From positions 1 through 64,000 of IMG/VR virus record IMGVR_UViG_3300042261_001312: a stretch of 64,000 bases of DNA; one strand, given 5' to 3'. The notes under the pieces are model-generated. The model had not been told where the DNA came from. It did not search any database and was given only the letters and a program-made list of their open reading frames with translations. Within the stretch, counting starts at the first letter, position 1. Each line of letters begins with the position of its first letter. This document shows, one piece after another, positions 1 to 12,365 of this stretch. Made by a program: the position numbers and the translations under genes.

Positions 1-205
1 TAATAGTAGTTGTTCAAAAGAATAACACCCCCCCCCCCCATGTACTCATTTTTAATTATCGAAATATTGTTGGTCTTGGAGTTTTTGAATTTGTCACATA
101 ACAACCATGATGTTTGTTATTATGTTGTGAATTGACATATCTGTCTGTTGAACATGACATGAATAATATTATTATAAATAAAGCCAATAGTGTTCTCATA
201 TAATT

Positions 206-766
206 TTAATTAAAAAATGATTTTAAATTTTTCTCTTTGATTAATGTTTTTAATTTAGACACGTACTTTTTATCCTCGGCATAATTCTGTTGAAGGTAAT
301 CAAAGTAGTCATCTTCTGATTTTAAATCGTACAGATATGTGGCGGAATAAAGAGCATAATCATGCACAGATTCAATCCAGTCTTCATAATATGCGTGTTC
401 ATTATTCGTGCCTTTGGTAAGGTTAATTCTTACACTTGCTTCTTTCATTCCAAAGAGGTTATGATTCTCTTTGAAGATAGGTGAAGTAAAGAATGAAGTT
501 TCATGCATTGCTTGAGCAAGCACGATGTGAGGGAATTTAAAATGCAATCCCTTAATCTCTTTAACCAACTTTTCTTGATTAAAAGAATTATACTTGCCCA
601 TAATCAATTTGACTTCTGTTTCGGTATAATTGCTTTTGATGTTTGGTTTAACGGACAATCCCAATATCAAAGATATTAGTACAATGCCACCAAATGCTTT
701 CAATCCAACATCAAGCCATTTGACTTTGACGAATTGAAGTTTCTGTTTGTCATACTTGTAGAACAT
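206..766 (-). CDS. Glucosaminidase-domain (FlgJ/GH73-like) peptidoglycan hydrolase with N-terminal TM anchor
   Basis: LAQAMHETS...NHNLFGMK...YEDWIESVHDY...YAEDKKY motifs; hydrophobic segment at aa 20-38. Confidence 0.75.
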   Translation of the reverse strand: MFYKYDKQKLQFVKVKWLDVGLKAFGGIVLISLILGLSVKPNIKSNYTETEVKLIMGKYNSFNQEKLVKEIKGLHFKFPHIVLAQAMHETSFFTSPIFKENHNLFGMKEASVRINLTKGTNNEHAYYEDWIESVHDYALYSATYLYDLKSEDDYFDYLQQNYAEDKKYVSKLKTLIKEKNLKSFFN

Positions 767-838
767 AGCAATATTATTTTAGTTGTACATTGGTATTATA
801 CGTACATTGATTAATAATTGTTACAATACGTTTTTTAA

Positions 839-1156
839 TTAATAATCACTAACACGTTCTGTTGTGCCAACGTACAATGCGCCAACACGTTCTGCGGTTT
901 TATTATATCTTTTGTTGAAGTAGATTAACAATTCAGATTCGAATTTACTTATATCAAAATCTTTTATTAATTTATTAATCTCAATCATATCCCACCAATA
1001 GTACAATAGTGTATTAGGTTTATGGAAATAACCATATGGGTCAAAACCAAATTTTAATTTCTTATTTATACCATCGGTGAATTTAGACATGGTGATTATG
1101 CCACTCTTACGTTCATTTAAATTACCATACAACTTTTTAAATAATTCTTCGTACAT
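839..1156 (-). CDS. Hypothetical protein
   Basis: Open frame on local coding strand, AT-rich leader. Confidence 0.6.
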   Translation of the reverse strand: MYEELFKKLYGNLNERKSGIITMSKFTDGINKKLKFGFDPYGYFHKPNTLLYYWWDMIEINKLIKDFDISKFESELLIYFNKRYNKTAERVGALYVGTTERVSDY

Positions 1157-1176
1157 TGGTATATGTGTATTATTAA

Positions 1177-1329
1177 TTAAAAATGATTACGATTGTCTTT
1201 ACGACTATATGCTTTCTTTGATTTATGTACTTTGGTGACGGATTTAAATCTACCATCATTCTCCATTTCAGCATCACGTGAACCTTTACGACTTGCTTTA
1301 ATAAATGGGTCAAGTTTTTTCTTCTTCAT
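1177..1329 (-). CDS. Small basic protein (50 aa) MKKKKLDPFIKASRKGSRDAEMENDGRFKSVTKVHKSKKAYSRKDNRNHF
   Basis: Translated by hand; follows ECF promoter 1417 and hairpin 1348; leader ttaatttaaaaacaATG. Confidence 0.7.
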   Translation of the reverse strand: MKKKKLDPFIKASRKGSRDAEMENDGRFKSVTKVHKSKKAYSRKDNRNHF

Positions 1330-1347
1330 TGTTTTTAAATTAAAAAA

Positions 1348-1382
1348 GGTGCAGTTGCTATGGTAGGCAAAAATTCTGCACC
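1348..1382 (-). ncRNA. Conserved hairpin motif, copy 1
   Basis: GGTGCAG-aattt-TTGC-ctaccata-GCAA-CTGCACC then U-run. Confidence 0.7.
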
Positions 1383-1444
1383 CTTGTAGATTAAAACAAA
1401 AACATTGAATTTGTTATACGTACATTGGTACAGAAAGGTTACAA

Positions 1445-1609
1445 CTACTTACTATCATTAACTTCATAGTCCAGAATTTCGCTATCAAGTACATCGAATC
1501 CTTCACCCGAATTGAATGAGTAATCAATTTGTTCCATTACTTCAGATAGTTCAATATCTGTGTCAATGACAAGTCATACTTTTACTTCCAAGAATATTTT
1601 GCGTGACAT
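1445..1609 (-). pseudogene. Small acidic protein with in-frame TGA at codon 12 (MSRKIFLEVKV*LVIDTDIELSEVMEQIDYSFNSGEGFDVLDSEILDYEVNDSK)
   Basis: Good start context; TGA at 1574-1576; protein-like frame continues to TAG at 1445. Confidence 0.55.
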
Positions 1610-1681
1610 AACTTTAATTTAAAATTGTACATTATATTAAATGTCCCAACCATTTTAATTAGTGGTTGGGACATTATTAAT

Positions 1682-2257
1682 TTATCTCCACAAATATCTC
1701 TGATATGCATTCTCATTAAGAAGGATTTCTTGCAACTTCACCAATTTCCTTGTTGTGTTTGCAGACGAAAGTGCTTCCTCAACAGAATTATACTTCTCTT
1801 CACCCGAACCACTATTTGTACGTATTCTGACCAAAATTTGTTCTTTGTAAGTAGTACCAAATTCGGTATTCCACCAATCGTTCCACAACTCAATCCTGAA
1901 GGAATAATCACTATGTCTCGGAATCTCAGGATTGCCTTCATTGTGTGCTTGAACTTTTATTCGATTATTATCGAAAGAATCAATTACTGCTTCAAACGGC
2001 AGATTGCCTTTCTCAAAATCGGCATTAAGCCTTTCAGCGACACTCTTGGCAGTTTGAGTGGTCAATTGACGAATTGCTTTCTGTTGAATTCCATGCTGAA
2101 TTCTGCCATTGTTGAATCTGTTGATTTCAGCACTCAGTTTATTGATGTCGATAATGCTGAATGGTTGGTCTTCCTGACTCTTATTCAGAGCAAGAAATTC
2201 ACTTTCAAGTTTTGCAATAATTTCAACTTGTTCTTGTGTTAAAGTCTTGTTTGCCAT
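1682..2257 (-). CDS. Hypothetical protein
   Basis: 191-aa frame on local coding strand. Confidence 0.7.
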   Translation of the reverse strand: MANKTLTQEQVEIIAKLESEFLALNKSQEDQPFSIIDINKLSAEINRFNNGRIQHGIQQKAIRQLTTQTAKSVAERLNADFEKGNLPFEAVIDSFDNNRIKVQAHNEGNPEIPRHSDYSFRIELWNDWWNTEFGTTYKEQILVRIRTNSGSGEEKYNSVEEALSSANTTRKLVKLQEILLNENAYQRYLWR

Positions 2258-2274
2258 GTCGTTATAGATTTTAA

Positions 2275-2553
2275 TTAAAGATATTGTTCAAGTTCTTGGA
2301 AGCCTTCAAGGAAGTCTTTTTCGTAAAGTTTTTTGCGAAGGACTTGACCGACCACTTGGTCAGTGTAGCCAAGTTCATCCAATAGGAATTCAGCAGTTTC
2401 GCCATCCATGCCAATTGACTTTAATGTTTCAATAGCCATGTTAAATCTGACTGCATTGTTGAAAGAAGAGAGTTGAGCAGTCTTTTTGAAATACTTTGGT
2501 AAATCAAAATCTTCGGGTTTAAGGGCATTGCCCAATGTTTCAAATAAGTTCAT
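2275..2553 (-). CDS. Hypothetical protein
   Basis: Directly behind ECF promoter 2582. Confidence 0.7.
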   Translation of the reverse strand: MNLFETLGNALKPEDFDLPKYFKKTAQLSSFNNAVRFNMAIETLKSIGMDGETAEFLLDELGYTDQVVGQVLRKKLYEKDFLEGFQELEQYL

Positions 2554-2608
2554 GGTAATTGTGTATTGGTTATGACAATTATACGGACATTAATTAAAAA
2601 TGGTTACA

Positions 2609-3040
2609 TTATATTTCAACAATATCATTAACCCTTTTAATTAAATTCTTCTCTATATTTTCTGAAACGTTTGAAGAATTAGGAAGAAATTCAACTTCTT
2701 CATCAAAACCAATGCGATAATACTCGGTAACAATATACCTATTATACTTCGTTTTATGATAGTTTGACCAAGCCAGAGCATTTGCAACCACAATGAACAA
2801 TGTGAACTTACGCAAAGTTACAACATTTTTTAAATTAAGTTGAATGACTTCACCATTGTAAAGAGTTAAGGTAAGAAACTCGCTACCTTTTTCCCTGTCA
2901 ACCTTTGTACAATAGTACGTTTCATTTGCACCACCCATGCCACCACCATAACTGAACAATACTGCTGTACAATCCTCAATGGTTTCTGTTGAAATAATGG
3001 TGGACGGACTATATGTACGTCCAATTTTAATCTTCTTCAT
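2609..3040 (-). CDS. Hypothetical protein
   Basis: 143-aa frame, typical leader. Confidence 0.7.
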   Translation of the reverse strand: MKKIKIGRTYSPSTIISTETIEDCTAVLFSYGGGMGGANETYYCTKVDREKGSEFLTLTLYNGEVIQLNLKNVVTLRKFTLFIVVANALAWSNYHKTKYNRYIVTEYYRIGFDEEVEFLPNSSNVSENIEKNLIKRVNDIVEI

Positions 3041-3062
3041 GTTATTGGTTTTTAATTAAAAA

Positions 3063-3260
3063 TTACATTGCAGTTGCCTTTATAACGGATTCAAGATCAT
3101 ACCCGTACTTTCGAGTATAGACGTGTTTAAAGTAATCTATGCCATTGGCTGAATGCATATACATAAAATTACCTACGTAGTTTATATCGCTTCGATTTAG
3201 GCTGAAAATGCCTTTTGCAATAGCATTGTCAAAGGCAGTATTTAAGTCAATAAATTCCAT
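3063..3260 (-). CDS. Hypothetical protein
   Basis: Behind ECF promoter 3289. Confidence 0.65.
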   Translation of the reverse strand: MEFIDLNTAFDNAIAKGIFSLNRSDINYVGNFMYMHSANGIDYFKHVYTRKYGYDLESVIKATAM

Positions 3261-3517
3261 AGGACAATATTTAATTGTGTATCTATTATACGGATATTAA
3301 TTAAAAAAGGTTACACAAATATAAAAAAGAAATCCCGCAGTTAAGGGAACTGCGGGACTCTAACCTAACCTAATTTAAACCCAATACATGACAAAACAAT
3401 TAAACGAGCGAGAAAGAAATATTTTTGTTACATTCAATTATACGAACATTAGTTCATAAAGGTTACATAAAAAGCAAAAAAAAAGGAAGATTTCTCTTCC
3501 CTTTTCTTAACTCCCTT

Positions 3518-4388
3518 TTAATTAAGGGAGTGGAGCATATATTCCAAGACTGTGGAATCGGTCATCATCCGCTTTTCGGGGATTGCAATATTGCGATTGT
3601 CATCGAAGATGTACTGATTTACTGCATTGTAAATGAGCCAGTCATTGATCACTCCGTTGTAGCCTAAATTCGGCTTGTCGGCTTCTTCCCTGATCTTCAG
3701 CATAATTGCGTTGATCGTATTGAATTTGGCGTTATCGACTGCCACGATGCCTGATGCCTTCAGAACTTCCTCAACTCTGTTGGTTGGGTTCATTGGGATT
3801 GACTTTGCCAATGCATTGAAACGACCAGTGATTTTGTCGATGACCAATTCTGCATTGTTGACAAAGAACACCAACATTTGGGTAAGGTCAGCCAAGGACT
3901 TTTTGATGTTGATGGTATGTTTGCCACCAATGGTAAGATTGAATTCCTTCATTTCCTTTACGGGAATGGTAAGACCATTAGTACAGACAAGGCGGAAATA
4001 ACCAAACATGATGCGATAGTTGGTCTTGCCATTGTAGGAGTGCTGAACGTTCAACTTCGGGAACACAACGTCATTTGTGCCTTCAATTGAGTAGGAATAC
4101 CTTTTGTCGGTAATCGTGTAGGATGCGTAGAAACGAACGTGTTTAACGTGCGTGTAAGTGGCTTTGAACTCAATCTCTTGGCTCTCAAGGATTGCTTCAA
4201 TGTTTGGGAAAATCTCTGCATTGGGAACTAACGCATACACGTTGGAGCAGTAGTTGAGTTTCATCTCACCACGTGGAGTTTGACCTACGACGATCTTTGC
4301 GTACTCGCTGTTGGTCAGATAATTCGACAGGGAAAAGAATGTCATTCAATCCGCAAGTTGTTGCACCTTCTTTAATTCTCTTTGCCAT
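3518..4388 (-). CDS. DUF932/DUF945-family protein, apparently frameshifted near 4315
   Basis: HSYNG...FRLVCTNG family motif; the start with good context (4388, behind promoter 4425) reads MAKRIKEGATTCGLNDILFPVELSD and is out of frame with the body NSEYAKIVVG. Confidence 0.7.
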
Positions 4389-4607
4389 GATAAATAATTT
4401 TTAATTGGTTTGTATATGCAATTATACGAATTTTAATTTAAAAAGGTTACATGATTTTTAATTTATTTTCTTATTTGAACAGATTCTAAATAAGTAGACT
4501 TTCGGGTAGGAGTGGATTACTCCCACCCATTTCTGACCTCGCCCATTCCCATACAAATATACGAATTTAAATTAAAAAAGGTTACATTTCTGCAACCTTT
4601 TTTTAAT

Positions 4608-4955
4608 TTATTTTTGAAGATAATCAACAACAAATTTCCATGCAGTATCAATATCATCACATAATAGTGCATGTTTTAATCCATCAAGTTCTTCGGGTTC
4701 TTCAGATTCGATTGATATTTTGGCAATCACTTGCATTAACCAATCCCAAGAGCAATCGTATTTTGGTTTATCGACAATTTGAAAATCTTCAATGTCGTCA
4801 TCAAAATAAGTTACAATTTCATCTTCGGGATAATCCTTCATACATTTCTTAATTGAAGAATATACCTCAAAAGAATATAAGTCATCCTTTGGTTCTTTAG
4901 GTTGATAATAACCCATAAACTTAACGATCAGTTTATTTCCTTCTTTCTTTTTCAT
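4608..4955 (-). CDS. Hypothetical protein (YDCSWDWLM motif)
   Basis: Behind promoter 4983. Confidence 0.65.
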   Translation of the reverse strand: MKKKEGNKLIVKFMGYYQPKEPKDDLYSFEVYSSIKKCMKDYPEDEIVTYFDDDIEDFQIVDKPKYDCSWDWLMQVIAKISIESEEPEELDGLKHALLCDDIDTAWKFVVDYLQK

Positions 4956-5028
4956 GTTAATTTATTTTTGATTTAAAGAATATACGCATCTTAATTAAAA
5001 AAGGTTACATTTCTGCAACCTTTTTTAA

Positions 5029-5268
5029 TTAAAGTTGAATGAACTCATTAAGCACCCAATCAATTTTGACTTCGTTGTTCTCATTGTGCCAATCAATAAA
5101 ATCTTCAATTGAATAATCACTTTCAAGAACATCACGAAGATAAGGTTGAAAATCTGTCCAAGACTTACGAATTAAGTCCATGAATTTCGTAAAGTTCATT
5201 GGTTCTTCTGGAGTAACTAAACCGATAATATCTTCGGTTTCTGTGTCGTGTAAAGTAACTACATACAT
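5029..5268 (-). CDS. Hypothetical acidic protein
   Basis: Open frame with typical leader. Confidence 0.65.
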   Translation of the reverse strand: MYVVTLHDTETEDIIGLVTPEEPMNFTKFMDLIRKSWTDFQPYLRDVLESDYSIEDFIDWHNENNEVKIDWVLNEFIQL

Positions 5269-5287
5269 GATTTTTAATTTAAGTTTG

Positions 5288-5359
5288 TAGTCGGAGCAGG
5301 ACTCGAACCTGCATACATAGCCACGTTCGCCATGCGCTAACCAATTACTATATCCGACT
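5288..5359 (-). ncRNA. tRNA-like RNA with non-canonical anticodon loop GAACGTG
   Basis: Acceptor AGTCGGA/TCCGACT, T-arm GCAGG-TTCGAGT-CCTGC; no U33. Confidence 0.6.
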
Positions 5360-5428
5360 AAGAGTCCGTGCTTTCCGAACTGTCAAATGCTTCATAACAC
5401 TTAGGCATTTTAGCATTAACTAACCACG

Positions 5429-5604
5429 TAGTCAGAACAGGACTCGAACCTGTAAGTCACATCTATTCCTACTTTGCTCCCAAGTACCTATCATATGTAA
5501 TTAGTATTAAACCATCTATCTTACATAATCAATATCGAAGCATTTGGTTTTTTATTACTGCCACTCACTCGTAGAGTGTGCGTCTGCCATTCCGCCATCC
5601 GACT
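5429..5604 (-). ncRNA. tRNA-like RNA with about 100 nt insertion between D and T arms
   Basis: Acceptor AGTCGGA/TCTGACT, Leu/Ser-type D arm GGCGGAATGGCAGACGC, T-arm ACAGG-TTCGAGT-CCTGT. Confidence 0.6.
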
Positions 5605-5669
5605 GTGTTCTACTTTTGATTTTTAATTTAGTAATCGCAGAATCAAAAAGTAGTAAAATAACTGCGCTG

Positions 5670-5795
5670 TGATTGGAACAGGAATCGAACCTGTAACCTT
5701 GGCATGTTGCACCACCTGTGCCTCCTACGGGAATTGTGGAATCGAACCACTGCCCACCTCTGCCACCAATGAGTTACCTATTACTCCATCCAACC
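5670..5795 (-). ncRNA. tRNA-like RNA with two T-loops
   Basis: Acceptor GGTTGGA/TCCAATC, D arm GAGT-AATAGGTA-ACTC, GTGG-TTCGATT-CCAC and ACAGG-TTCGATT-CCTGT; 5' end 10 nt from promoter 5805. Confidence 0.6.
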
Positions 5796-5858
5796 ATTAT
5801 ATTATACGTTTTTTAATTAGAAAAGGTTACAAAGATAATCAATTTTTTTAAAAAGAAA

Positions 5859-5897
5859 AGAGTGCCGTTGCTATGGTGGGCAAAAATTCGGCACTCT
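5859..5897 (-). ncRNA. Conserved hairpin motif, copy 2
   Basis: AGAGTGCCG-aattt-TTGC-ccaccata-GCAA-CGGCACTCT then U-run; behind promoter 5919. Confidence 0.7.
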
Positions 5898-5940
5898 AAC
5901 GATCACAACATCTTAATATACGTATGGTAGAAAAGAAAGG

Positions 5941-6180
5941 TTACACTAAATCAGACCAGACGATTGAAATTGTGTAGTCACCATTACTCCACCAACCATC
6001 TTCCAGACATCCTTCCAGATAACTTTCAGCATCTGGACAACCATTCTCAATTGCTTTTGCTTTGAAAAGTGCTTCTGCTTTATCCACAACCTCTTGAGAA
6101 AGTTGTTCTTCCCACACTCCGAAGGATTCTACTCCAGAAATGCTATTGTCAACTACTTCAATAATGTTAATTACTCTCAT
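5941..6180 (-). CDS. Hypothetical acidic protein
   Basis: Open frame. Confidence 0.65.
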   Translation of the reverse strand: MRVINIIEVVDNSISGVESFGVWEEQLSQEVVDKAEALFKAKAIENGCPDAESYLEGCLEDGWWSNGDYTISIVWSDLV

Positions 6181-6199
6181 ATCGTTTTAAATTAAAAAG

Positions 6200-6379
6200 T
6201 TAATCAAATTCCCATTCAACAGAATCAGCAGTTTCCCATTTATCATCAATTAAAACTTGAAACTCTTCACCAATCCAACGATATGGTAATGGTTCTGAAT
6301 CAAGATAATATAACTTTCCAACGTGAACTGCAAGATTTGATTCTTGTAAATCTTTCCGTATTCTCGCTAATTTACTCAT
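6200..6379 (-). CDS. Small hypothetical protein (59 aa, MSKLARIRKDLQ...)
   Basis: Hand-translated; leader ttaattaaaacgacATG. Confidence 0.6.
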   Translation of the reverse strand: MSKLARIRKDLQESNLAVHVGKLYYLDSEPLPYRWIGEEFQVLIDDKWETADSVEWEFD

Positions 6380-6402
6380 GTCGTTTTAATTAAAAAGGTT
6401 AA

Positions 6403-6444
6403 AAGGGTGCAGTTGCTATGGTAGGCAATAAATTCTGCACCCTT
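6403..6444 (-). ncRNA. Conserved hairpin motif, copy 3
   Basis: AAGGGTGCAG-aattta-TTGC-ctaccata-GCAA-CTGCACCCTT. Confidence 0.7.
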
Positions 6445-6461
6445 GCTGAAAACCAGACTCT

Positions 6462-6581
6462 TTAATGCGTTATATATAAAATAAAAACCATTGTCGCTAA
6501 TGTCACAAAGAAAAGAATGATTCCAATGGATTCAATTGATTTTGATTTCTTTGCTTTTGATTTCTTTGCTTTTGCTTTCAT
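6462..6581 (-). CDS. Small membrane peptide (39 aa, MKAKAKKSKAKKSKSIESIGIILFFVTLATMVFILYITH)
   Basis: Behind promoter 6609; basic N-terminus plus one TM segment. Confidence 0.5.
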   Translation of the reverse strand: MKAKAKKSKAKKSKSIESIGIILFFVTLATMVFILYITH

Positions 6582-6740
6582 TGTGTTTATTATTGGTTGT
6601 ATCTATTATACGAATATTGATTAAGAAAGGTTACATAAAAAAGCGAAGGTGCGGTCATTCACTCCGCACCTTCTGTTAACCACTAATCATTATTAATCTA
6701 AAAATTGCTATGGAAGCAATACGTATAATCTTTTAAAGGG

Positions 6741-6781
6741 TGGAGTGCCGTTGCTATGGTAGGCAAAAATTCAGCACTCCA
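6741..6781 (-). ncRNA. Conserved hairpin motif, copy 4
   Basis: TGGAGTGCTG-aattt-TTGC-ctaccata-GCAA-CGGCACTCCA; behind promoter 6815. Confidence 0.7.
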
Positions 6782-6914
6782 AGTAGAATAGTAACGTTTC
6801 TAACTGATATATTATACGTATATTGGTACAGAAAGGTTACATATAAAAAGAAAAAACCTTCACTTTATTTTGTGAAGGTTTTTGTTGTTCGTCTAAATTA
6901 TATATAGATTACCT

Positions 6915-6956
6915 CTAGGGAGAACCTCTTTCACTATTCGGATTTAGTGTTTTCAT
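6915..6956 (-). CDS. Mini-ORF MKTLNPNSERGSP ending CCC-TAG-AGG-TAA
   Basis: Only ORF between promoter 6997 and terminator hairpin at about 6853-6882. Confidence 0.45.
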   Translation of the reverse strand: MKTLNPNSERGSP

Positions 6957-7023
6957 ACTGACTGACTTTTAATTTGCTAAAAAATGTTAATCATTATACG
7001 TACATTGCGTTGAAAAGGTTACA

Positions 7024-7281
7024 TTATCCAGCAGTACTTTTATAAGCAAGATTCCATACGTTATACGTTTTCTTAACCACATACAATTCAAAGTAACTAT
7101 CTGTGTTAGGTTGAACATTGTTAATGTGAATCACCTTATATGTTTCCATACCATACACATACTCAATGGGTTCTACACCTTTGTTAAAGTAATCCTTTAA
7201 GGAAAGTAATAACCATTTGAGGAATTCTTCACCAAAGGCTTCTTTGATTTTGTGTTGATTTCTTAAACTGAAACGTATCAT
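7024..7281 (-). CDS. Hypothetical protein
   Basis: Start MIRFSL overlaps the upstream stop (ATGA coupling). Confidence 0.65.
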   Translation of the reverse strand: MIRFSLRNQHKIKEAFGEEFLKWLLLSLKDYFNKGVEPIEYVYGMETYKVIHINNVQPNTDSYFELYVVKKTYNVWNLAYKSTAG

Positions 7282-7934
7282 TTTGATTTTACCTTTATTG
7301 AATATCCCCATTCTTTCATACCATTCTTTGACATATCGGTATCAGCAACAAACTTAATATTATTGGCTTGTGCTTTGATGAAGTCCATAGGATTGTCATA
7401 ATTGAATCTGTAATTGGGATATTTGTCTGCAATCTTTTTTATGTCAACACTAATCTCAACTACATATCTTTTGGTGAGAATATTCTTCTTGACGACTGGT
7501 TTCTTCTTTGGTTTTGGTATTAAACTTTTAACATCTTTCCATATGAGATCACCCATCTCATCTCCATCCCATAAGCCAATGCTACCATCATCATAATCAA
7601 TCTCACCGATGGTATATGCTTTGCGTTTGTAAACAATCATATCACCTTCACTGAATTGCAGTTGAAGTGGAATGTTTATTAATTTAGAATAATTGCCCTC
7701 ATCATCGATTTTAGTTTCCTCAAACAATTTTGCAAGGAGCGATGCAAGGTATTCAATATTCTTGGCACGTACATTCACGTTCTCATCATCCATTGCAACT
7801 TTATACAAGTGCAATATGCCTTCGAATGTTTTGGATTGTTTCTCATTGAGAGTATGGATATTCTCTTGGAGAATTTCAATGCCGTTCTCAATTGTATACC
7901 ATAATTCTTGGTAGCCATCAATTAATTCTTCCAT
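7278..7934 (-). CDS. Hypothetical protein
   Basis: 218-aa frame. Confidence 0.7.
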   Translation of the reverse strand: MEELIDGYQELWYTIENGIEILQENIHTLNEKQSKTFEGILHLYKVAMDDENVNVRAKNIEYLASLLAKLFEETKIDDEGNYSKLINIPLQLQFSEGDMIVYKRKAYTIGEIDYDDGSIGLWDGDEMGDLIWKDVKSLIPKPKKKPVVKKNILTKRYVVEISVDIKKIADKYPNYRFNYDNPMDFIKAQANNIKFVADTDMSKNGMKEWGYSIKVKSK

Positions 7935-7950
7935 CTTAATTAAAATTAGG

Positions 7951-8256
7951 TTAGTACAATCTCATTGTTTTAAGTTTGTCAACATCGACATACCTGTTTG
8001 AACCACCTGTGTAATCCTTGTAGTCCTTTGCAGTTCTGTAAAGCAATTTGGTATAACCAAAGTGTCTTACATCAGAACAACTGAAGTAAAATATTTGACC
8101 AAACTTGTTGGTAAAGAAGCCACTAAAGTAATAGAAGCCATAAGACATCTTTACATTAGTACATTGCATCTCTTTAAGATTTCGCATTATTCTTCGCCTT
8201 TCTCTGCTGAAGAATTCTTTGAAGTCTTGTCCTAAATCTTTTCCTTTGTAATTCAT
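7951..8256 (-). CDS. Conserved phage hypothetical protein (YRTAKDYKDYTGGSN)
   Basis: Behind promoter 8290. Confidence 0.7.
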   Translation of the reverse strand: MNYKGKDLGQDFKEFFSRERRRIMRNLKEMQCTNVKMSYGFYYFSGFFTNKFGQIFYFSCSDVRHFGYTKLLYRTAKDYKDYTGGSNRYVDVDKLKTMRLY

Positions 8257-10692: not shown

Positions 10693-11481
10693 TTAATCAA
10701 GGGCATAGTCCTCTCTATACTTCTGTAATTCACTCTGCAAGGTTGCCCTCAATCTGAGTATATTTACCTTAACACTATTCAAAGGCATTTGACAGATTTC
10801 AGCAACTTCCTCATAAGACTTCTGCCTTAAAAAATGTGCTATTGCGATCTTCCTAAACTTCGGCTTCAACGTGCGGAATGCCTTTGCAACATCTGACAAT
10901 ACTTCCTTACTCTCAACACTTGCACTTGTATTGCTTTCAGCATTGATTTGGAAATATTCGTCACCATCAGCATCAACATAGTCGCTGATATTCGTATTGA
11001 TATTCTTGCGAACCTTCTTTGTTGAAGATACACCATATTCATTCTCAACCTCAACTTCTACTACTTTGGTAGCCTTGCGATAGTGGTCAACCATCTGATG
11101 ATAGGCAATACCTTTCAGCCACGTGTTGATCTTACTCATTTCCTTATCGTATGTAGCCAAATGCTTCTTAGCCTTCATAAAGGTATCATCGCAGATTTCC
11201 TCTGCGATTTCATAATGACCATTGCCCATTTTGAACTTCAGAAAGTTCAGAACTTCCTTATAGTATTTTGCATAGATTTCCTCAAAGGAAACTTCGGGAA
11301 TAACCAAACCATTGTCACATACCAAACGAACTGCAATTACAGTTTCAGTTGCAGTACCTTTGGCAATTGCCCAAGATTGTTTCATACAAGCGGAGAACAT
11401 TTCCATAGTCCTAACTGATTGACTACGAAACATTTGCCAAGCCCTTTTCATAATCTCTGATTTGTTGTAGGTCGTTTTCAT
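10693..11481 (-). CDS. ECF-family RNA polymerase sigma factor with short N-terminal extension
   Basis: Sigma2 region FEEIYAKY...AEEICDDTFMKA...WLKGIAYHQMVDHYRK; sigma4 region LKPKFRK...KSYEEVAEICQMPLNSVKVNILR; N-terminal IMKRAWQMFR...MKQSWAIAK helix; start set at MKTTY. Confidence 0.9.
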   Translation of the reverse strand: MKTTYNKSEIMKRAWQMFRSQSVRTMEMFSACMKQSWAIAKGTATETVIAVRLVCDNGLVIPEVSFEEIYAKYYKEVLNFLKFKMGNGHYEIAEEICDDTFMKAKKHLATYDKEMSKINTWLKGIAYHQMVDHYRKATKVVEVEVENEYGVSSTKKVRKNINTNISDYVDADGDEYFQINAESNTSASVESKEVLSDVAKAFRTLKPKFRKIAIAHFLRQKSYEEVAEICQMPLNSVKVNILRLRATLQSELQKYREDYALD

Positions 11482-11519
11482 AGCGAATAGATTAAAAAGT
11501 GAATGAATGATTAACAATG

Positions 11520-12319: not shown

Positions 12320-12365
12320 CTACCCAAAGAGTGCAGAGAAATCTGCACCCTTTTTTTACTGCCTT

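What the first reader, a model, noticed from the sequence alone, without database searches (positions are those of the whole stretch)
1348..6781. Four-copy hairpin RNA family with covarying outer stem and invariant CCAUAGCAA core
Copies at 1348, 5859, 6403 and 6741 keep aattt-TTGC-c(t/c)accata-GCAA while the outer stem changes compensatorily (GGTGCAG/CTGCACC vs AGAGTGCCG/CGGCACTCT, with one U-G wobble). A minimal fifth copy TTGC-ttccata-GCAA is at 6705-6719. Three lie 20-35 nt behind an ECF promoter, and copy 2 forms an ORF-less transcript of about 60 nt. Candidates: protein-binding decoy or antitoxin-mimic sRNA, or a nut/put-like antitermination site. The core is also complementary to TTGCTATG at the start of gene 206-766, which may be chance.
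Basis: partly seen in the sequence, partly recalled or inferred. Interest (0 to 1): 0.72.

Follow-up and report, generated by a model that had tools for sequence, protein, structure and literature searches.

The report
Conserved ACCA-loop RNA hairpins in a jumbo phage
A freshwater jumbo phage and its relatives carry a previously undescribed family of two-storey RNA hairpins that keep an ACCA loop while their stems change by matched mutations, so the hairpins are probably docking sites for an unknown factor that controls phage transcripts.

Summary
Four hairpins lie on the transcribed (minus) strand, plus one truncated copy. They share the core TTGCCYACCATAGCAA (4 found, 0.04 expected) and occur nowhere else in the 328-kb phage genome.

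The family extends to relatives. I found 18 distinct members in at least eight phage lineages. All have:
- a GC-rich lower stem of 7-10 bp;
- an A/U-rich bulge of 2-6 nt on the 5' side only;
- an upper stem of 4-5 bp;
- a loop that is either UAACCAG (12 members) or CYACCAWA (6 members).

Seven of 14 pairs change on both sides, 99% of cells stay paired, and a G-C, G.U, A-U series is present. G.U pairs fit only the transcribed strand.

"CCAUAGCAA" is therefore invariant only within this genome. Only ACCA is invariant across the family.

The hairpins occur in three settings:
- between an ECF-type promoter and a 50-aa basic protein gene (7 lineages);
- in promoter-driven units without an ORF, holding one or two hairpins (4 lineages);
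- after ORFs, followed by a U-tract.

No Rfam family matches, no bacterial counterpart was found, and no listed RNA run holds the region.

My best reading (about 0.4) is a factor-binding RNA operator built into attenuator or terminator hairpins of the phage sigma-factor regulon. Plain terminators, a put-like element and a decoy sRNA remain open. The complementarity to the start of gene 206-766 is chance.

The parts
1345..1385 (-). Hairpin c1 (class 2). Layout: AAGGGUGCAG-AAUUU-UUGC-CUACCAUA-GCAA-CUGCACCUUU, then a U-tract. It lies in the leader of the 50-aa basic ORF, and the stem ends about 15 nt before the AUG.
1415..1443 (-). ECF-type promoter-like element TGTAACCTTTCTGTACCAATGTACGTATA upstream of c1. 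The -10 box ends 30 nt before the stem.
   Evidence: The same spacer type precedes the orthologous hairpins in L267, L275, L299 and L306.
1177..1329 (-). 50-aa basic ORF (P0002; motif VTKVHKSKKAYSRK) directly downstream of c1.
   Evidence: The order promoter, hairpin, this ORF is kept in 7 lineages.
5859..5897 (-). Hairpin c2 (class 2, loop CCACCAUA) followed by UUUUCUUUUU. With its promoter it forms a predicted unit of about 60 nt without an ORF.
5917..5945 (-). ECF-type promoter-like element upstream of c2. The -10 box ends 20 nt before the stem, and the spacer itself contains CTACCATA.
5803..5831 (-). Next ECF-type promoter, 28 nt after c2. It drives the tRNA-like array.
6403..6444 (-). Hairpin c3 (class 2, bulge AAUUUA). 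It lies between the 39-aa ORF 6462-6581 and the 59-aa ORF 6200-6379 and is followed by UUUUAACCUUUUU.
6741..6781 (-). Hairpin c4 (class 2, one U.G wobble, no U-tract). It is the first element of a predicted unit of about 170 nt without an ORF.
6813..6841 (-). ECF-type promoter-like element upstream of c4. The -10 box ends 32 nt before the stem.
6704..6720 (-). Minimal copy c5: AUUGC-UUCCAUA-GCAAU followed by UUUUU. It has the upper module only, with no lower stem or bulge.
6637..6673 (-). Ordinary strong terminator (GAAGGUGCGG...CCGCACCUUC followed by U6) that closes the c4/c5 unit.
10693..11517 (-). Phage ECF-type sigma factor gene (Sigma70_r2 plus Sigma70_r4_2) at the head of the promoter cluster. 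It is the inferred reader of the TGTAACC-N16-CGTATA promoters.

Best explanation
The hairpins are cis-acting RNA elements of the transcripts made from the phage's ECF-type promoters. Each has two parts.

- The lower part is a GC-rich stem of 7-10 bp, usually followed by a U-tract. This gives the element the properties of an intrinsic terminator or attenuator.
- The upper part is a 5'-side A/U bulge, a 4-5 bp stem and an ACCA loop. I infer that this is a sequence-specific docking site for a trans-acting factor, most likely a protein.

In the leader position, between promoter and basic ORF, factor binding would set how much transcription or translation passes into the gene. In the units without an ORF, the same module is released as a small RNA of about 60-170 nt, which could titrate the same factor. 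After ORFs, the element ends the transcript.

Shown: the structure, the strand, the conservation, the positions and the absence of any known family.
Inferred: that the elements are transcribed from those promoters, that they terminate, that a factor binds them, and what that factor is.
For: 1. Structure under selection. In 10 class-1 members, 7 of 14 pairs change on both sides, 99.3% of cells are paired, and 0 of 500 shuffles reach the observed values. Searches agree.

2. Evolutionary intermediates. One upper-stem pair shows the series G-C (L267B), G.U (L299), A-U (L275/L278). Every G.U pair would be a C.A mismatch on the other strand, so the fold belongs to the transcribed strand.

3. Loop kept while stems are replaced. 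UAACCAG sits on upper stems UUGCU, UUACU, GUAGU and UUGUU, and on lower stems GGUGCAG, GAGUGCCG, GAAUGCGG, UGUAUGG, GGGGCG and CCCGUUG. Model R2 recovered the G002 and G008 members, which were not used to build it.

4. Fixed position. The -10 box ends 20-32 nt before the stem in 9 of the first 14 members. The stem ends 13-18 nt before the AUG of the basic ORF in all 5 leaders tabulated, and the L304 and L306 leaders show the same short A/U-rich spacer.

5. Units without an ORF recur in four lineages: G000 (c2; c4 plus c5), L275 839/885, L306 8205/8247 and G002.

6. Terminator-like features. 9 of the first 13 members have a U-tract, and 7 lie just upstream of the next promoter.

7. Architecture. 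A lower stem, a 5' bulge, a short upper stem and a conserved loop is the layout of classic protein-binding hairpins such as IRE, TAR, and the MS2 and PP7 operators (general knowledge). The phi21 boxB loop is CUAACC (PMC12550061), which resembles UAACC here.
Against: - There is no transcript evidence. No listed RNA run holds the region.
- No binding factor is identified. The adjacent basic protein is absent from G002, which is complete and has a hairpin. Its cellular homologs have no hairpin. It therefore cannot be the general partner.
- The complex prediction was not run by the tool.
- Several members lack a U-tract (c4, L275_839, L278), so termination is not universal.
- The resemblance to protein-binding hairpins is an analogy, not a test.
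- The family size is modest: 18 members, many from closely related phages.
Confidence: 0.4

Rival explanations
1. The hairpins are ordinary intrinsic terminators, or terminator-promoter cassettes like the PeSLs of T4-type phages. They spread by duplication and gene conversion through a mosaic early region, and the conserved top is only inherited baggage.
For: - 9 of the first 13 members have a U-tract, and 7 sit right before the next promoter.
- An ordinary terminator at 12326-12356 uses nearly the same lower stem (AGAGUGCAGA-GAAA-UCUGCACCC followed by U7) without the upper module.
- Copies sit at mosaic breakpoints between G000, L267 and L275.
- Within G000 all copies carry the same upper module, which fits gene conversion.
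Against: - The loop UAACCAG is identical in phages whose two stems have diverged completely (G002, G008 and the L275 group). Neutral baggage would have drifted.
- Some members lack any U-tract.
- Seven lineages keep the hairpin between a promoter and the gene it drives, where an efficient unregulated terminator would silence the gene.
- Dedicated units without an ORF, holding two hairpins, are conserved.
Confidence: 0.17
2. The hairpin is a nut- or put-like processive antitermination element. Once transcribed near the promoter, it binds the elongating RNAP, either directly (put-like) or through a small basic protein (N-like). The polymerase can then read through the many terminators of this region.
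For: - It is promoter-proximal at a near-constant distance in 9 members.
- There are several same-orientation copies in one early region packed with terminators.
- The loop UAACC resembles the phi21 boxB hexaloop CUAACC.
- A Lys/Arg-rich 50-aa ORF follows the leader copy, as N follows nutL.
- A short linear motif ATTC(A/G)AT precedes 5 of 9 leader hairpins and 0 of 165 other promoter leaders. Four of those five are orthologs.
Against: - No boxA (CGCTCTT) and no N, Q or Nun homolog was found by Pfam, PHROGs or NCBIfam.
- The basic protein also occurs in bacterial chromosomes without the hairpin and is missing from G002.
- Many copies are themselves followed by U-tracts, or sit at gene ends with no promoter upstream (c3, L267A, L275_2603, G008). 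This is unlike nut and put sites.
- put has two specific stem-loops with no sequence likeness here.
Confidence: 0.15
3. The elements act in trans as small RNAs. The units without an ORF (c2; c4 plus c5; the tandem pairs in L275 and L306; G002) make small RNAs whose ACCA loops soak up a host or phage RNA-binding protein, or a defence component. The leader copies are the regulated targets of the same protein.
For: - Promoter-driven units without an ORF, holding one or two hairpins, are conserved in four lineages.
- The c4 unit folds into three discrete hairpins with z = -4.0.
- The same loop appears in the cis and trans settings.
Against: - No partner is known.
- There is no bacterial counterpart or CRISPR-repeat-like array with this sequence in 185,579 species genomes. 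The patterns were stringent.
- No conserved complementary target was found in the relatives' sampled regions.
- No expression data exist.
Confidence: 0.15
4. The hairpins work at the DNA level as single-stranded-DNA hairpins: N4-type promoters, replication or priming signals, or recombination/transposition hairpins of the REP or IS200/605 kind.
For: - Covariation alone cannot tell RNA from same-strand ssDNA.
- All copies share one orientation and cluster in one part of the genome.
- A TnpB-like ORF lies next to L267A.
Against: - Positions are fixed relative to promoters and start codons rather than to any replication feature.
- N4 promoter hairpins have 3-nt loops.
- No Y1 transposase context was seen in the window's ORFs.
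- U-tracts and the next promoter follow the hairpins, as expected for RNA-level elements.
Confidence: 0.05

Closest known systems
boxB hairpins of the lambdoid nut sites, especially phi21 boxB (PDB 1NYB)
   Same: - A small promoter-proximal RNA hairpin in phage early transcripts.
- Several copies per genome.
- Loop sequence conserved while stems vary.
- The phi21 loop CUAACC shares UAACC with the class-1 loop UAACCAG (PMC12550061).
- A small basic ORF follows one copy, as N follows nutL.
   Different: - No boxA and no N homolog.
- Here the hairpin has two stems with a 5' bulge and is usually followed by a U-tract.
- Some copies lie at gene ends.
- The host is probably a Bacteroidota member, and the promoters are ECF-type.
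HK022 put RNA
   Same: A cis-acting structured RNA near early promoters, present in more than one copy, with stems supported by covariation. No protein partner is required in principle.
   Different: put is about 70 nt with two specific stem-loops that act on the RNAP beta-prime subunit. There is no sequence likeness, single hairpins suffice here, and many copies look like terminators.
PeSL cassettes (promoter-early stem-loops) of T4-type phages, and intrinsic terminators in general
   Same: Repeated stem-loop plus promoter modules between small early genes in a mosaic, hyperplastic region. A GC-rich stem with a U-tract lies upstream of the next promoter.
   Different: An extra upper module with an invariant loop is kept across phages whose stems have diverged. 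Copies also occur downstream of promoters, in leaders, and without U-tracts.
Bulged protein-binding hairpins (IRE, HIV TAR, MS2 and PP7 operators)
   Same: The architecture matches: a variable lower stem, a bulge on the 5' side only, an upper stem of 4-5 bp and a conserved loop of 6-8 nt. As with the IRE, the same element is used both in 5' leaders and at 3' ends.
   Different: These are unrelated organisms and sequences. The likeness is architectural only, and no binding protein is known here.
T7 RNase III processing sites
   Same: A family of similar bulged hairpins between early genes, the first just downstream of the early promoters. After cleavage they can stabilise 3' ends.
   Different: T7 sites have about 20 bp of helix with a two-sided internal loop. 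Here there are only 12-15 bp, the bulge is on the 5' side only, and the apical loop is the conserved part.

Membership tests
Any Rfam 15 family | A covariance-model match at or near the family's gathering score. | tested here: not met
   At gathering thresholds the 64-kb window yields only tRNAs. A permissive search (E up to 10) of 1-8000 gives no hit that overlaps any hairpin.
Intrinsic (Rho-independent) terminator | A GC-rich stem immediately followed by a U-tract. | tested here: inconclusive
   9 of the first 13 members have at least 4-5 U directly after the stem, 2 have interrupted U runs and 2-3 have none. The simple terminator scan does not call them, because the bulge breaks the stem. 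Termination itself was not measured.
Lambdoid nut site (boxA plus boxB with an N protein) | A boxB-type hairpin with a conserved loop, downstream of an early promoter. | tested here: inconclusive
   A promoter-proximal hairpin with a conserved loop is present. The loop shares UAACC with phi21 boxB, but it has 7-8 nt and sits on a bulged two-stem hairpin.
Lambdoid nut site (boxA plus boxB with an N protein) | A boxA element (CGCTCTT-like) a few nt upstream of boxB. | tested here: not met
   The leaders read contain no boxA-like sequence. Only a weak ATTC(A/G)AT motif is seen, mostly in orthologous leaders.
Lambdoid nut site (boxA plus boxB with an N protein) | An N-family antiterminator encoded nearby. 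| tested here: not met
   The window ORFs scanned between 206 and 12319 have no Pfam match to an antiterminator, and those up to 6180 that were also scanned against PHROGs have none either. The basic 50-aa protein has no family, has cellular homologs and is absent from G002.
HK022 put | Two adjacent stem-loops of about 70 nt that make RNAP termination-resistant in cis. | not testable with these tools
   Tandem pairs exist in L275 and L306, but single hairpins are the rule. The functional test needs transcription assays.
ToxI-like antitoxin RNA or pseudo-ToxI | Tandem direct repeats of about 34-36 nt processed by a ToxN-type nuclease. | tested here: not met
   The copies are dispersed over 5.4 kb rather than tandem. 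The only adjacent pairs are hairpins separated by unrelated spacers.
RNA anti-CRISPR (solitary CRISPR-repeat mimic) | Sequence likeness to a CRISPR repeat of a host genome. | tested here: not met
   Scans of 185,579 species genomes with the class-1 and class-2 cores plus stem gave 0 and 3 hits. All 3 are isolated chance matches without the hairpin. Stems also differ between copies in one phage. The patterns were stringent, so a diverged repeat could have been missed.
tRNA or tRNA-like element | A match to the tRNA model or an ARAGORN call. | tested here: not met
   Neither ARAGORN nor the Rfam tRNA model reports anything at the hairpins on either strand.

The most novel reading that the evidence does not exclude
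The ACCA-loop hairpin is an RNA device that acts directly on the transcription machinery of a phage sigma-factor regulon. It would either bind RNAP or the phage ECF sigma holoenzyme itself (in a put-like or 6S-like manner), or capture a conserved host factor. The units without an ORF would then be dedicated regulatory small RNAs of jumbo phages. This would be an RNA-based layer of temporal control not described for Bacteroidota phages.
Probability: 0.15. Interest if true: 0.8.

Novelty: new variant of a known kind. Interest (0 to 1): 0.58.

Why it matters
Very little is known about how jumbo phages of Bacteroidota time their gene expression.

This work defines three things:
- a phage-encoded ECF-type sigma factor gene;
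- about 25 near-identical promoters immediately downstream of it;
- a structured RNA motif embedded in that regulon, well supported by covariation, with an invariant loop.

The motif offers a compact and testable handle on regulated termination, antitermination or protein titration in these phages. It is also a candidate new RNA family for Rfam-type databases.

The recurring pairing of the hairpin with a 50-aa basic protein points to a small regulatory circuit that could be rebuilt in a model Flavobacterium. That protein also occurs in bacterial chromosomes.

Tried and rejected
- Exact-core scan of IMG/VR (TTGCCNACCATAGCAA): 91 hits, all chance matches without the hairpin.
- Model R1 on 100 promoter-bearing loci and on six jumbo-phage records: nothing significant.
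- First metagenome pattern (with the 5-nt bulge): 0 hits. The second pattern gave the key relative, L267.
- IMG/VR scan for the class-1 upper module: 14 hits, none with a lower stem.
- Two scans of bacterial genomes: 0 hits and 3 chance hits.
- Merged model R3 on 47 viral records: only G008 again, plus ordinary terminators.
- A loose descriptor search for ACCA-loop bipartite hairpins in 2.8 Mb: no further convincing members.
- Neighbouring ORF 1682-2257 and the sigma factor as probes in IMG/VR: no close relatives.
- Antisense-target idea: no conserved CUGGUUA or UAUGGUAG site on the transcribed strand of the relatives. TTGCTATG occurs at chance frequency.
- Basic protein as obligatory partner: rejected as a general rule, because G002 lacks it and its cellular homologs lack the hairpin.
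- Complex prediction of the basic protein with the hairpin: the tool did not fold it, so this is not evidence either way.
- RNA-seq support: no listed RNA run holds the region. DNA contigs are identical to the window.
- Literature searches for the promoter or hairpin sequence: nothing relevant.
- tRNA D-arm, T-arm and anticodon-arm mimicry, and complementarity to the 16S 790 loop: considered from the sequence but dropped, because the canonical positions do not fit and no tool supports them.

Full report
**What the window is**

The window is the first 64 kb of a 327,676-bp IMG/VR virus record that CheckV rates 100% complete. The record comes from lake or freshwater metagenomes. It carries 33 tRNA genes in these 64 kb.

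Its DUF932 protein has homologs only in Flavobacterium and Bacteroides phages among isolates. A Bacteroidota host is therefore likely, though this is an inference. All genes in 1-11.5 kb are on the minus strand, so I read the finding on that strand.

**The observation**

The 16-mer TTGCCYACCATAGCAA occurs four times, against 0.04 expected. With the truncated copy at 6704-6720, these are the only occurrences of CCATAGCAA in the whole genome.

Each full copy folds into:
- a 9-10 bp lower stem;
- a bulge of 5-6 nt on the 5' side (AAUUU or AAUUUA);
- a 4-bp upper stem UUGC/GCAA;
- an 8-nt loop CYACCAUA.

Free energies are -16 to -19 kcal/mol and z-scores are -3.6 to -4.3. The flanks outside the hairpin do not align, apart from the upstream promoter. 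The repeated unit is therefore the hairpin itself.

Three lower-stem pairs change on both sides and two G.U wobbles occur. Only two stem types exist within this genome, however.

**The promoters**

TGTAACC-N16-CGTATA occurs 25 times, always with the same spacing, and 23 of the 25 are on the minus strand. Sixteen lie in 1-10.5 kb and six in 313-327.6 kb. This is one region split by the record's ends.

An ECF-type sigma factor gene (Sigma70_r2 plus Sigma70_r4_2) lies directly upstream of the first promoter, at 10693-11517. It is preceded by a TATATTTG box that resembles the Bacteroidota housekeeping -7 element.

I infer that this sigma factor is made early and reads the cluster. Relatives keep the same gene order: sigma, small ORFs, DUF932, basic ORF, glucosaminidase, GP88. 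Sigma-70-type promoter matches are not enriched (45 found against 48.9 expected).

**Finding relatives**

- The exact core is not found in IMG/VR beyond chance.
- Model R1 finds nothing in other jumbo phages that share the promoter type.
- A metagenome scan with the core plus part of the stem gave one real relative, L267.
- Homologs of the 50-aa basic ORF and of the sigma factor led to further contigs: L275-L279, L299/L300, L304 and L306.
- Synteny and the promoter pattern pointed to a hairpin in the 363-kb phage G002.
- Model R2 was built from five class-1 hairpins. It recovered the G002 hairpin (E = 0.003) and a new one in G008 (E = 9e-5). Neither was in the model.

**Anatomy of the family**

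There are 18 distinct members.

Class 1 has 12 members:
- lower stem of 7-10 bp;
- bulge AAU, AAC, UU or UA;
- 5-bp upper stem;
- loop UAACCAG, identical in all 12.

Class 2 has 6 members (the four in the window, L267:944-988 and L275:2603-2648):
- bulge AAUU, AAUUU, AAUUUA or AUAUU;
- upper stem UUGC/GCAA;
- loop CYACCAWA.

Aligned by sequence, class 2 is class 1 with the closing U-A pair turned into C.A and one loop A lost. The two classes are therefore homologous.

Four features are constant across all members: ACCA in the loop, the A that follows the loop, a bulge on the 5' strand only, and a G-C pair directly beneath it.

The stems are not constant:
- upper stems: UUGCU/AGCAA, UUACU/AGUAA, UUGCU/AGUAA, GUAGU/ACUAC, UUGUU/AACGA;
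- lower stems: GGUGCAG, GAGUGCCG, GAAUGCGG, UGUAUGG, GGGGCG, CCCGUUG.

On ten class-1 members, 7 of 14 pairs change on both sides and 99.3% of cells pair. No shuffle in 500 reaches the observed values, and sliding the partner by 1-3 columns collapses pairing to 31-53%.

The G-C, G.U, A-U series in one upper-stem pair, and the other G.U pairs, fit only the transcribed strand. This is strong evidence for a selected fold on the transcribed strand.

**Where the hairpins sit**

*Setting I: leader of the basic ORF.* The order is promoter, hairpin, then the 50-aa basic ORF, in seven lineages: G000 c1, L267, L275, L278, L299, L304 and L306. The -10 box ends 27-31 nt before the stem (about 40 nt in L304). 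The stem ends 13-18 nt before the AUG.

*Setting II: promoter-driven units without an ORF.*
- c2, about 60 nt, ended by a U-tract and the next promoter.
- c4 plus c5 plus a strong terminator, about 170 nt, folding as three separate hairpins with z = -4.0.
- Tandem pairs in L275 (839/885) and L306 (8205/8247).
- The single G002 hairpin, between two promoters.

*Setting III: after ORFs, with a U-tract and usually the next promoter.* These are c3, L267A, L275_2603 and G008.

Overall, 9 of the first 13 members carry a U-tract and 9 of the first 14 lie 20-32 nt behind a promoter.

**What it is not**

- No Rfam family matches.
- It is not a tRNA.
- It is not a tandem ToxI-like array.
- No bacterial counterpart or CRISPR-like array was found in 185,579 species genomes, using stringent patterns.
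- No conserved antisense target was found.

**How it most likely works**

The lower stem plus U-tract gives terminator or attenuator behaviour. The upper module is conserved in sequence while both stems turn over, so something must recognise it specifically.

The architecture (variable lower stem, 5' bulge, short upper stem, conserved loop) is that of classic protein-binding hairpins. The class-1 loop also shares UAACC with the phi21 boxB hexaloop CUAACC.

I therefore favour a factor-binding operator built into attenuators and terminators of the phage sigma regulon. The units without an ORF could act as titrators.

The partner is unknown. The neighbouring basic protein is an attractive candidate within the G000 clade, where it is linked to the hairpin in 7 of 7 lineages. 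It cannot be the general partner, for two reasons:
- G002 has the hairpin but no detectable homolog.
- Cellular homologs of the protein lack the hairpin.

The attempt to model the protein-RNA pair was not executed by the tool.

No RNA data exist for this phage. Transcription, termination and binding are therefore all inferred.

**Rivals**

- Plain terminators do not explain the invariant loop or the leader copies.
- A nut- or put-like element fits the promoter-proximal copies. It does not fit the gene-end copies, the missing boxA or the missing N-type protein.
- A trans-acting decoy sRNA fits the units without an ORF and is compatible with the main model.
- A DNA-level role is unlikely, given the fixed relation to promoters and start codons.

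**Novelty and scores**

This is an undescribed structured RNA motif of a known general kind: a phage cis-regulatory or terminator-embedded hairpin. I rate it a new variant of a known kind, with interest 0.58. My confidence that the structured element is real is about 0.9. My confidence in the proposed mechanism is about 0.4.

Noticed in passing
window ~4455-4555 (-); G000 ~327360-327465 (-); L267 ~1036-1135 and ~4190-4290; L275 ~2690-2790; G002 ~272560-272660 and ~274980-275080: A second promoter-driven RNA family without an ORF. It holds GCGAGGUY..GGUGGGAGUAAUCCAC.CCUACC plus a 3' hairpin UUUAGAAU...AUUCUAAAU. There are seven copies in four phages, each 30-41 nt behind an ECF-like promoter. 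The only Rfam likeness is a weak match to the ylbH leader (27.6 bits against a gathering score of 50).
   Followed up: partly
window 5283-5800 (-): A tRNA-like array behind promoter 5803-5831. The Rfam tRNA model scores 32.3 bits at 5288-5359 and 23 bits at 5429-5521, but ARAGORN calls nothing there. Several T-arm-like GGTTCGA(T/G)TCC motifs are present, and one candidate appears to be interrupted by an insert of about 150 nt.
   Followed up: partly
window 4574-4603 and 4997-5023 (-): Terminator-promoter overlap cassettes. The hairpin GGTTGCA-GAAA-TGTAACC is followed by a T-run, and its 3' arm is the -35 box of the next ECF-like promoter. Logan contigs break at these repeats.
   Followed up: partly
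window 10693-11517 (-): A phage ECF-type sigma factor gene (Sigma70_r2 plus Sigma70_r4_2) at the head of the promoter cluster. It is preceded by a TATATTTG box that resembles the Bacteroidota housekeeping -7 element. A second gene with a Sigma70_r2 domain lies at G000 239274-239483 (+).
   Followed up: partly
window 1177-1329 (-); P0002-P0007: A family of 50-65 aa Lys/Arg-rich proteins (motif VTKVHKSKKAY.RK). It is shared by these phages and by Bacteroidota-like chromosomes, for example next to proB/proA and next to thioredoxin/DUF5652. It has no Pfam or NCBIfam family, and its function is unknown.
   Followed up: partly
window 3518-4388 (-): The DUF932 gene is split over two frames in this record (4266-4388 and 3518-4345). 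In L267 it is one ORF (1203-2080). This may be a real frameshift or an assembly error. The DNA contigs of two other runs show no difference here.
   Followed up: partly
window 33976-34047 (-): A tRNA with anticodon CTA, which looks like an amber suppressor and which ARAGORN labels Pyl. It is one of 33 tRNA genes in 64 kb. Possible stop-codon reassignment was not examined.
   Followed up: no
window 6852-7023 (-): Another unit without an ORF: promoter 6995-7023 followed by about 130 nt and the terminator at 6852-6883. It holds only a 13-codon reading frame that ends at TAG.
   Followed up: no
window 12326-12356: An ordinary bidirectional terminator (AGAGUGCAGA-GAAA-UCUGCACCC followed by U7). It uses almost the same lower stem as the hairpin family but lacks the upper module.
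   Followed up: yes
window 29-41: A run of 12-13 C residues close to the start of the record.
   Followed up: no
L267 1-640: A TnpB/IS605 OrfB-like reading frame at the start of the relative's contig, just upstream of hairpin L267A.
   Followed up: no
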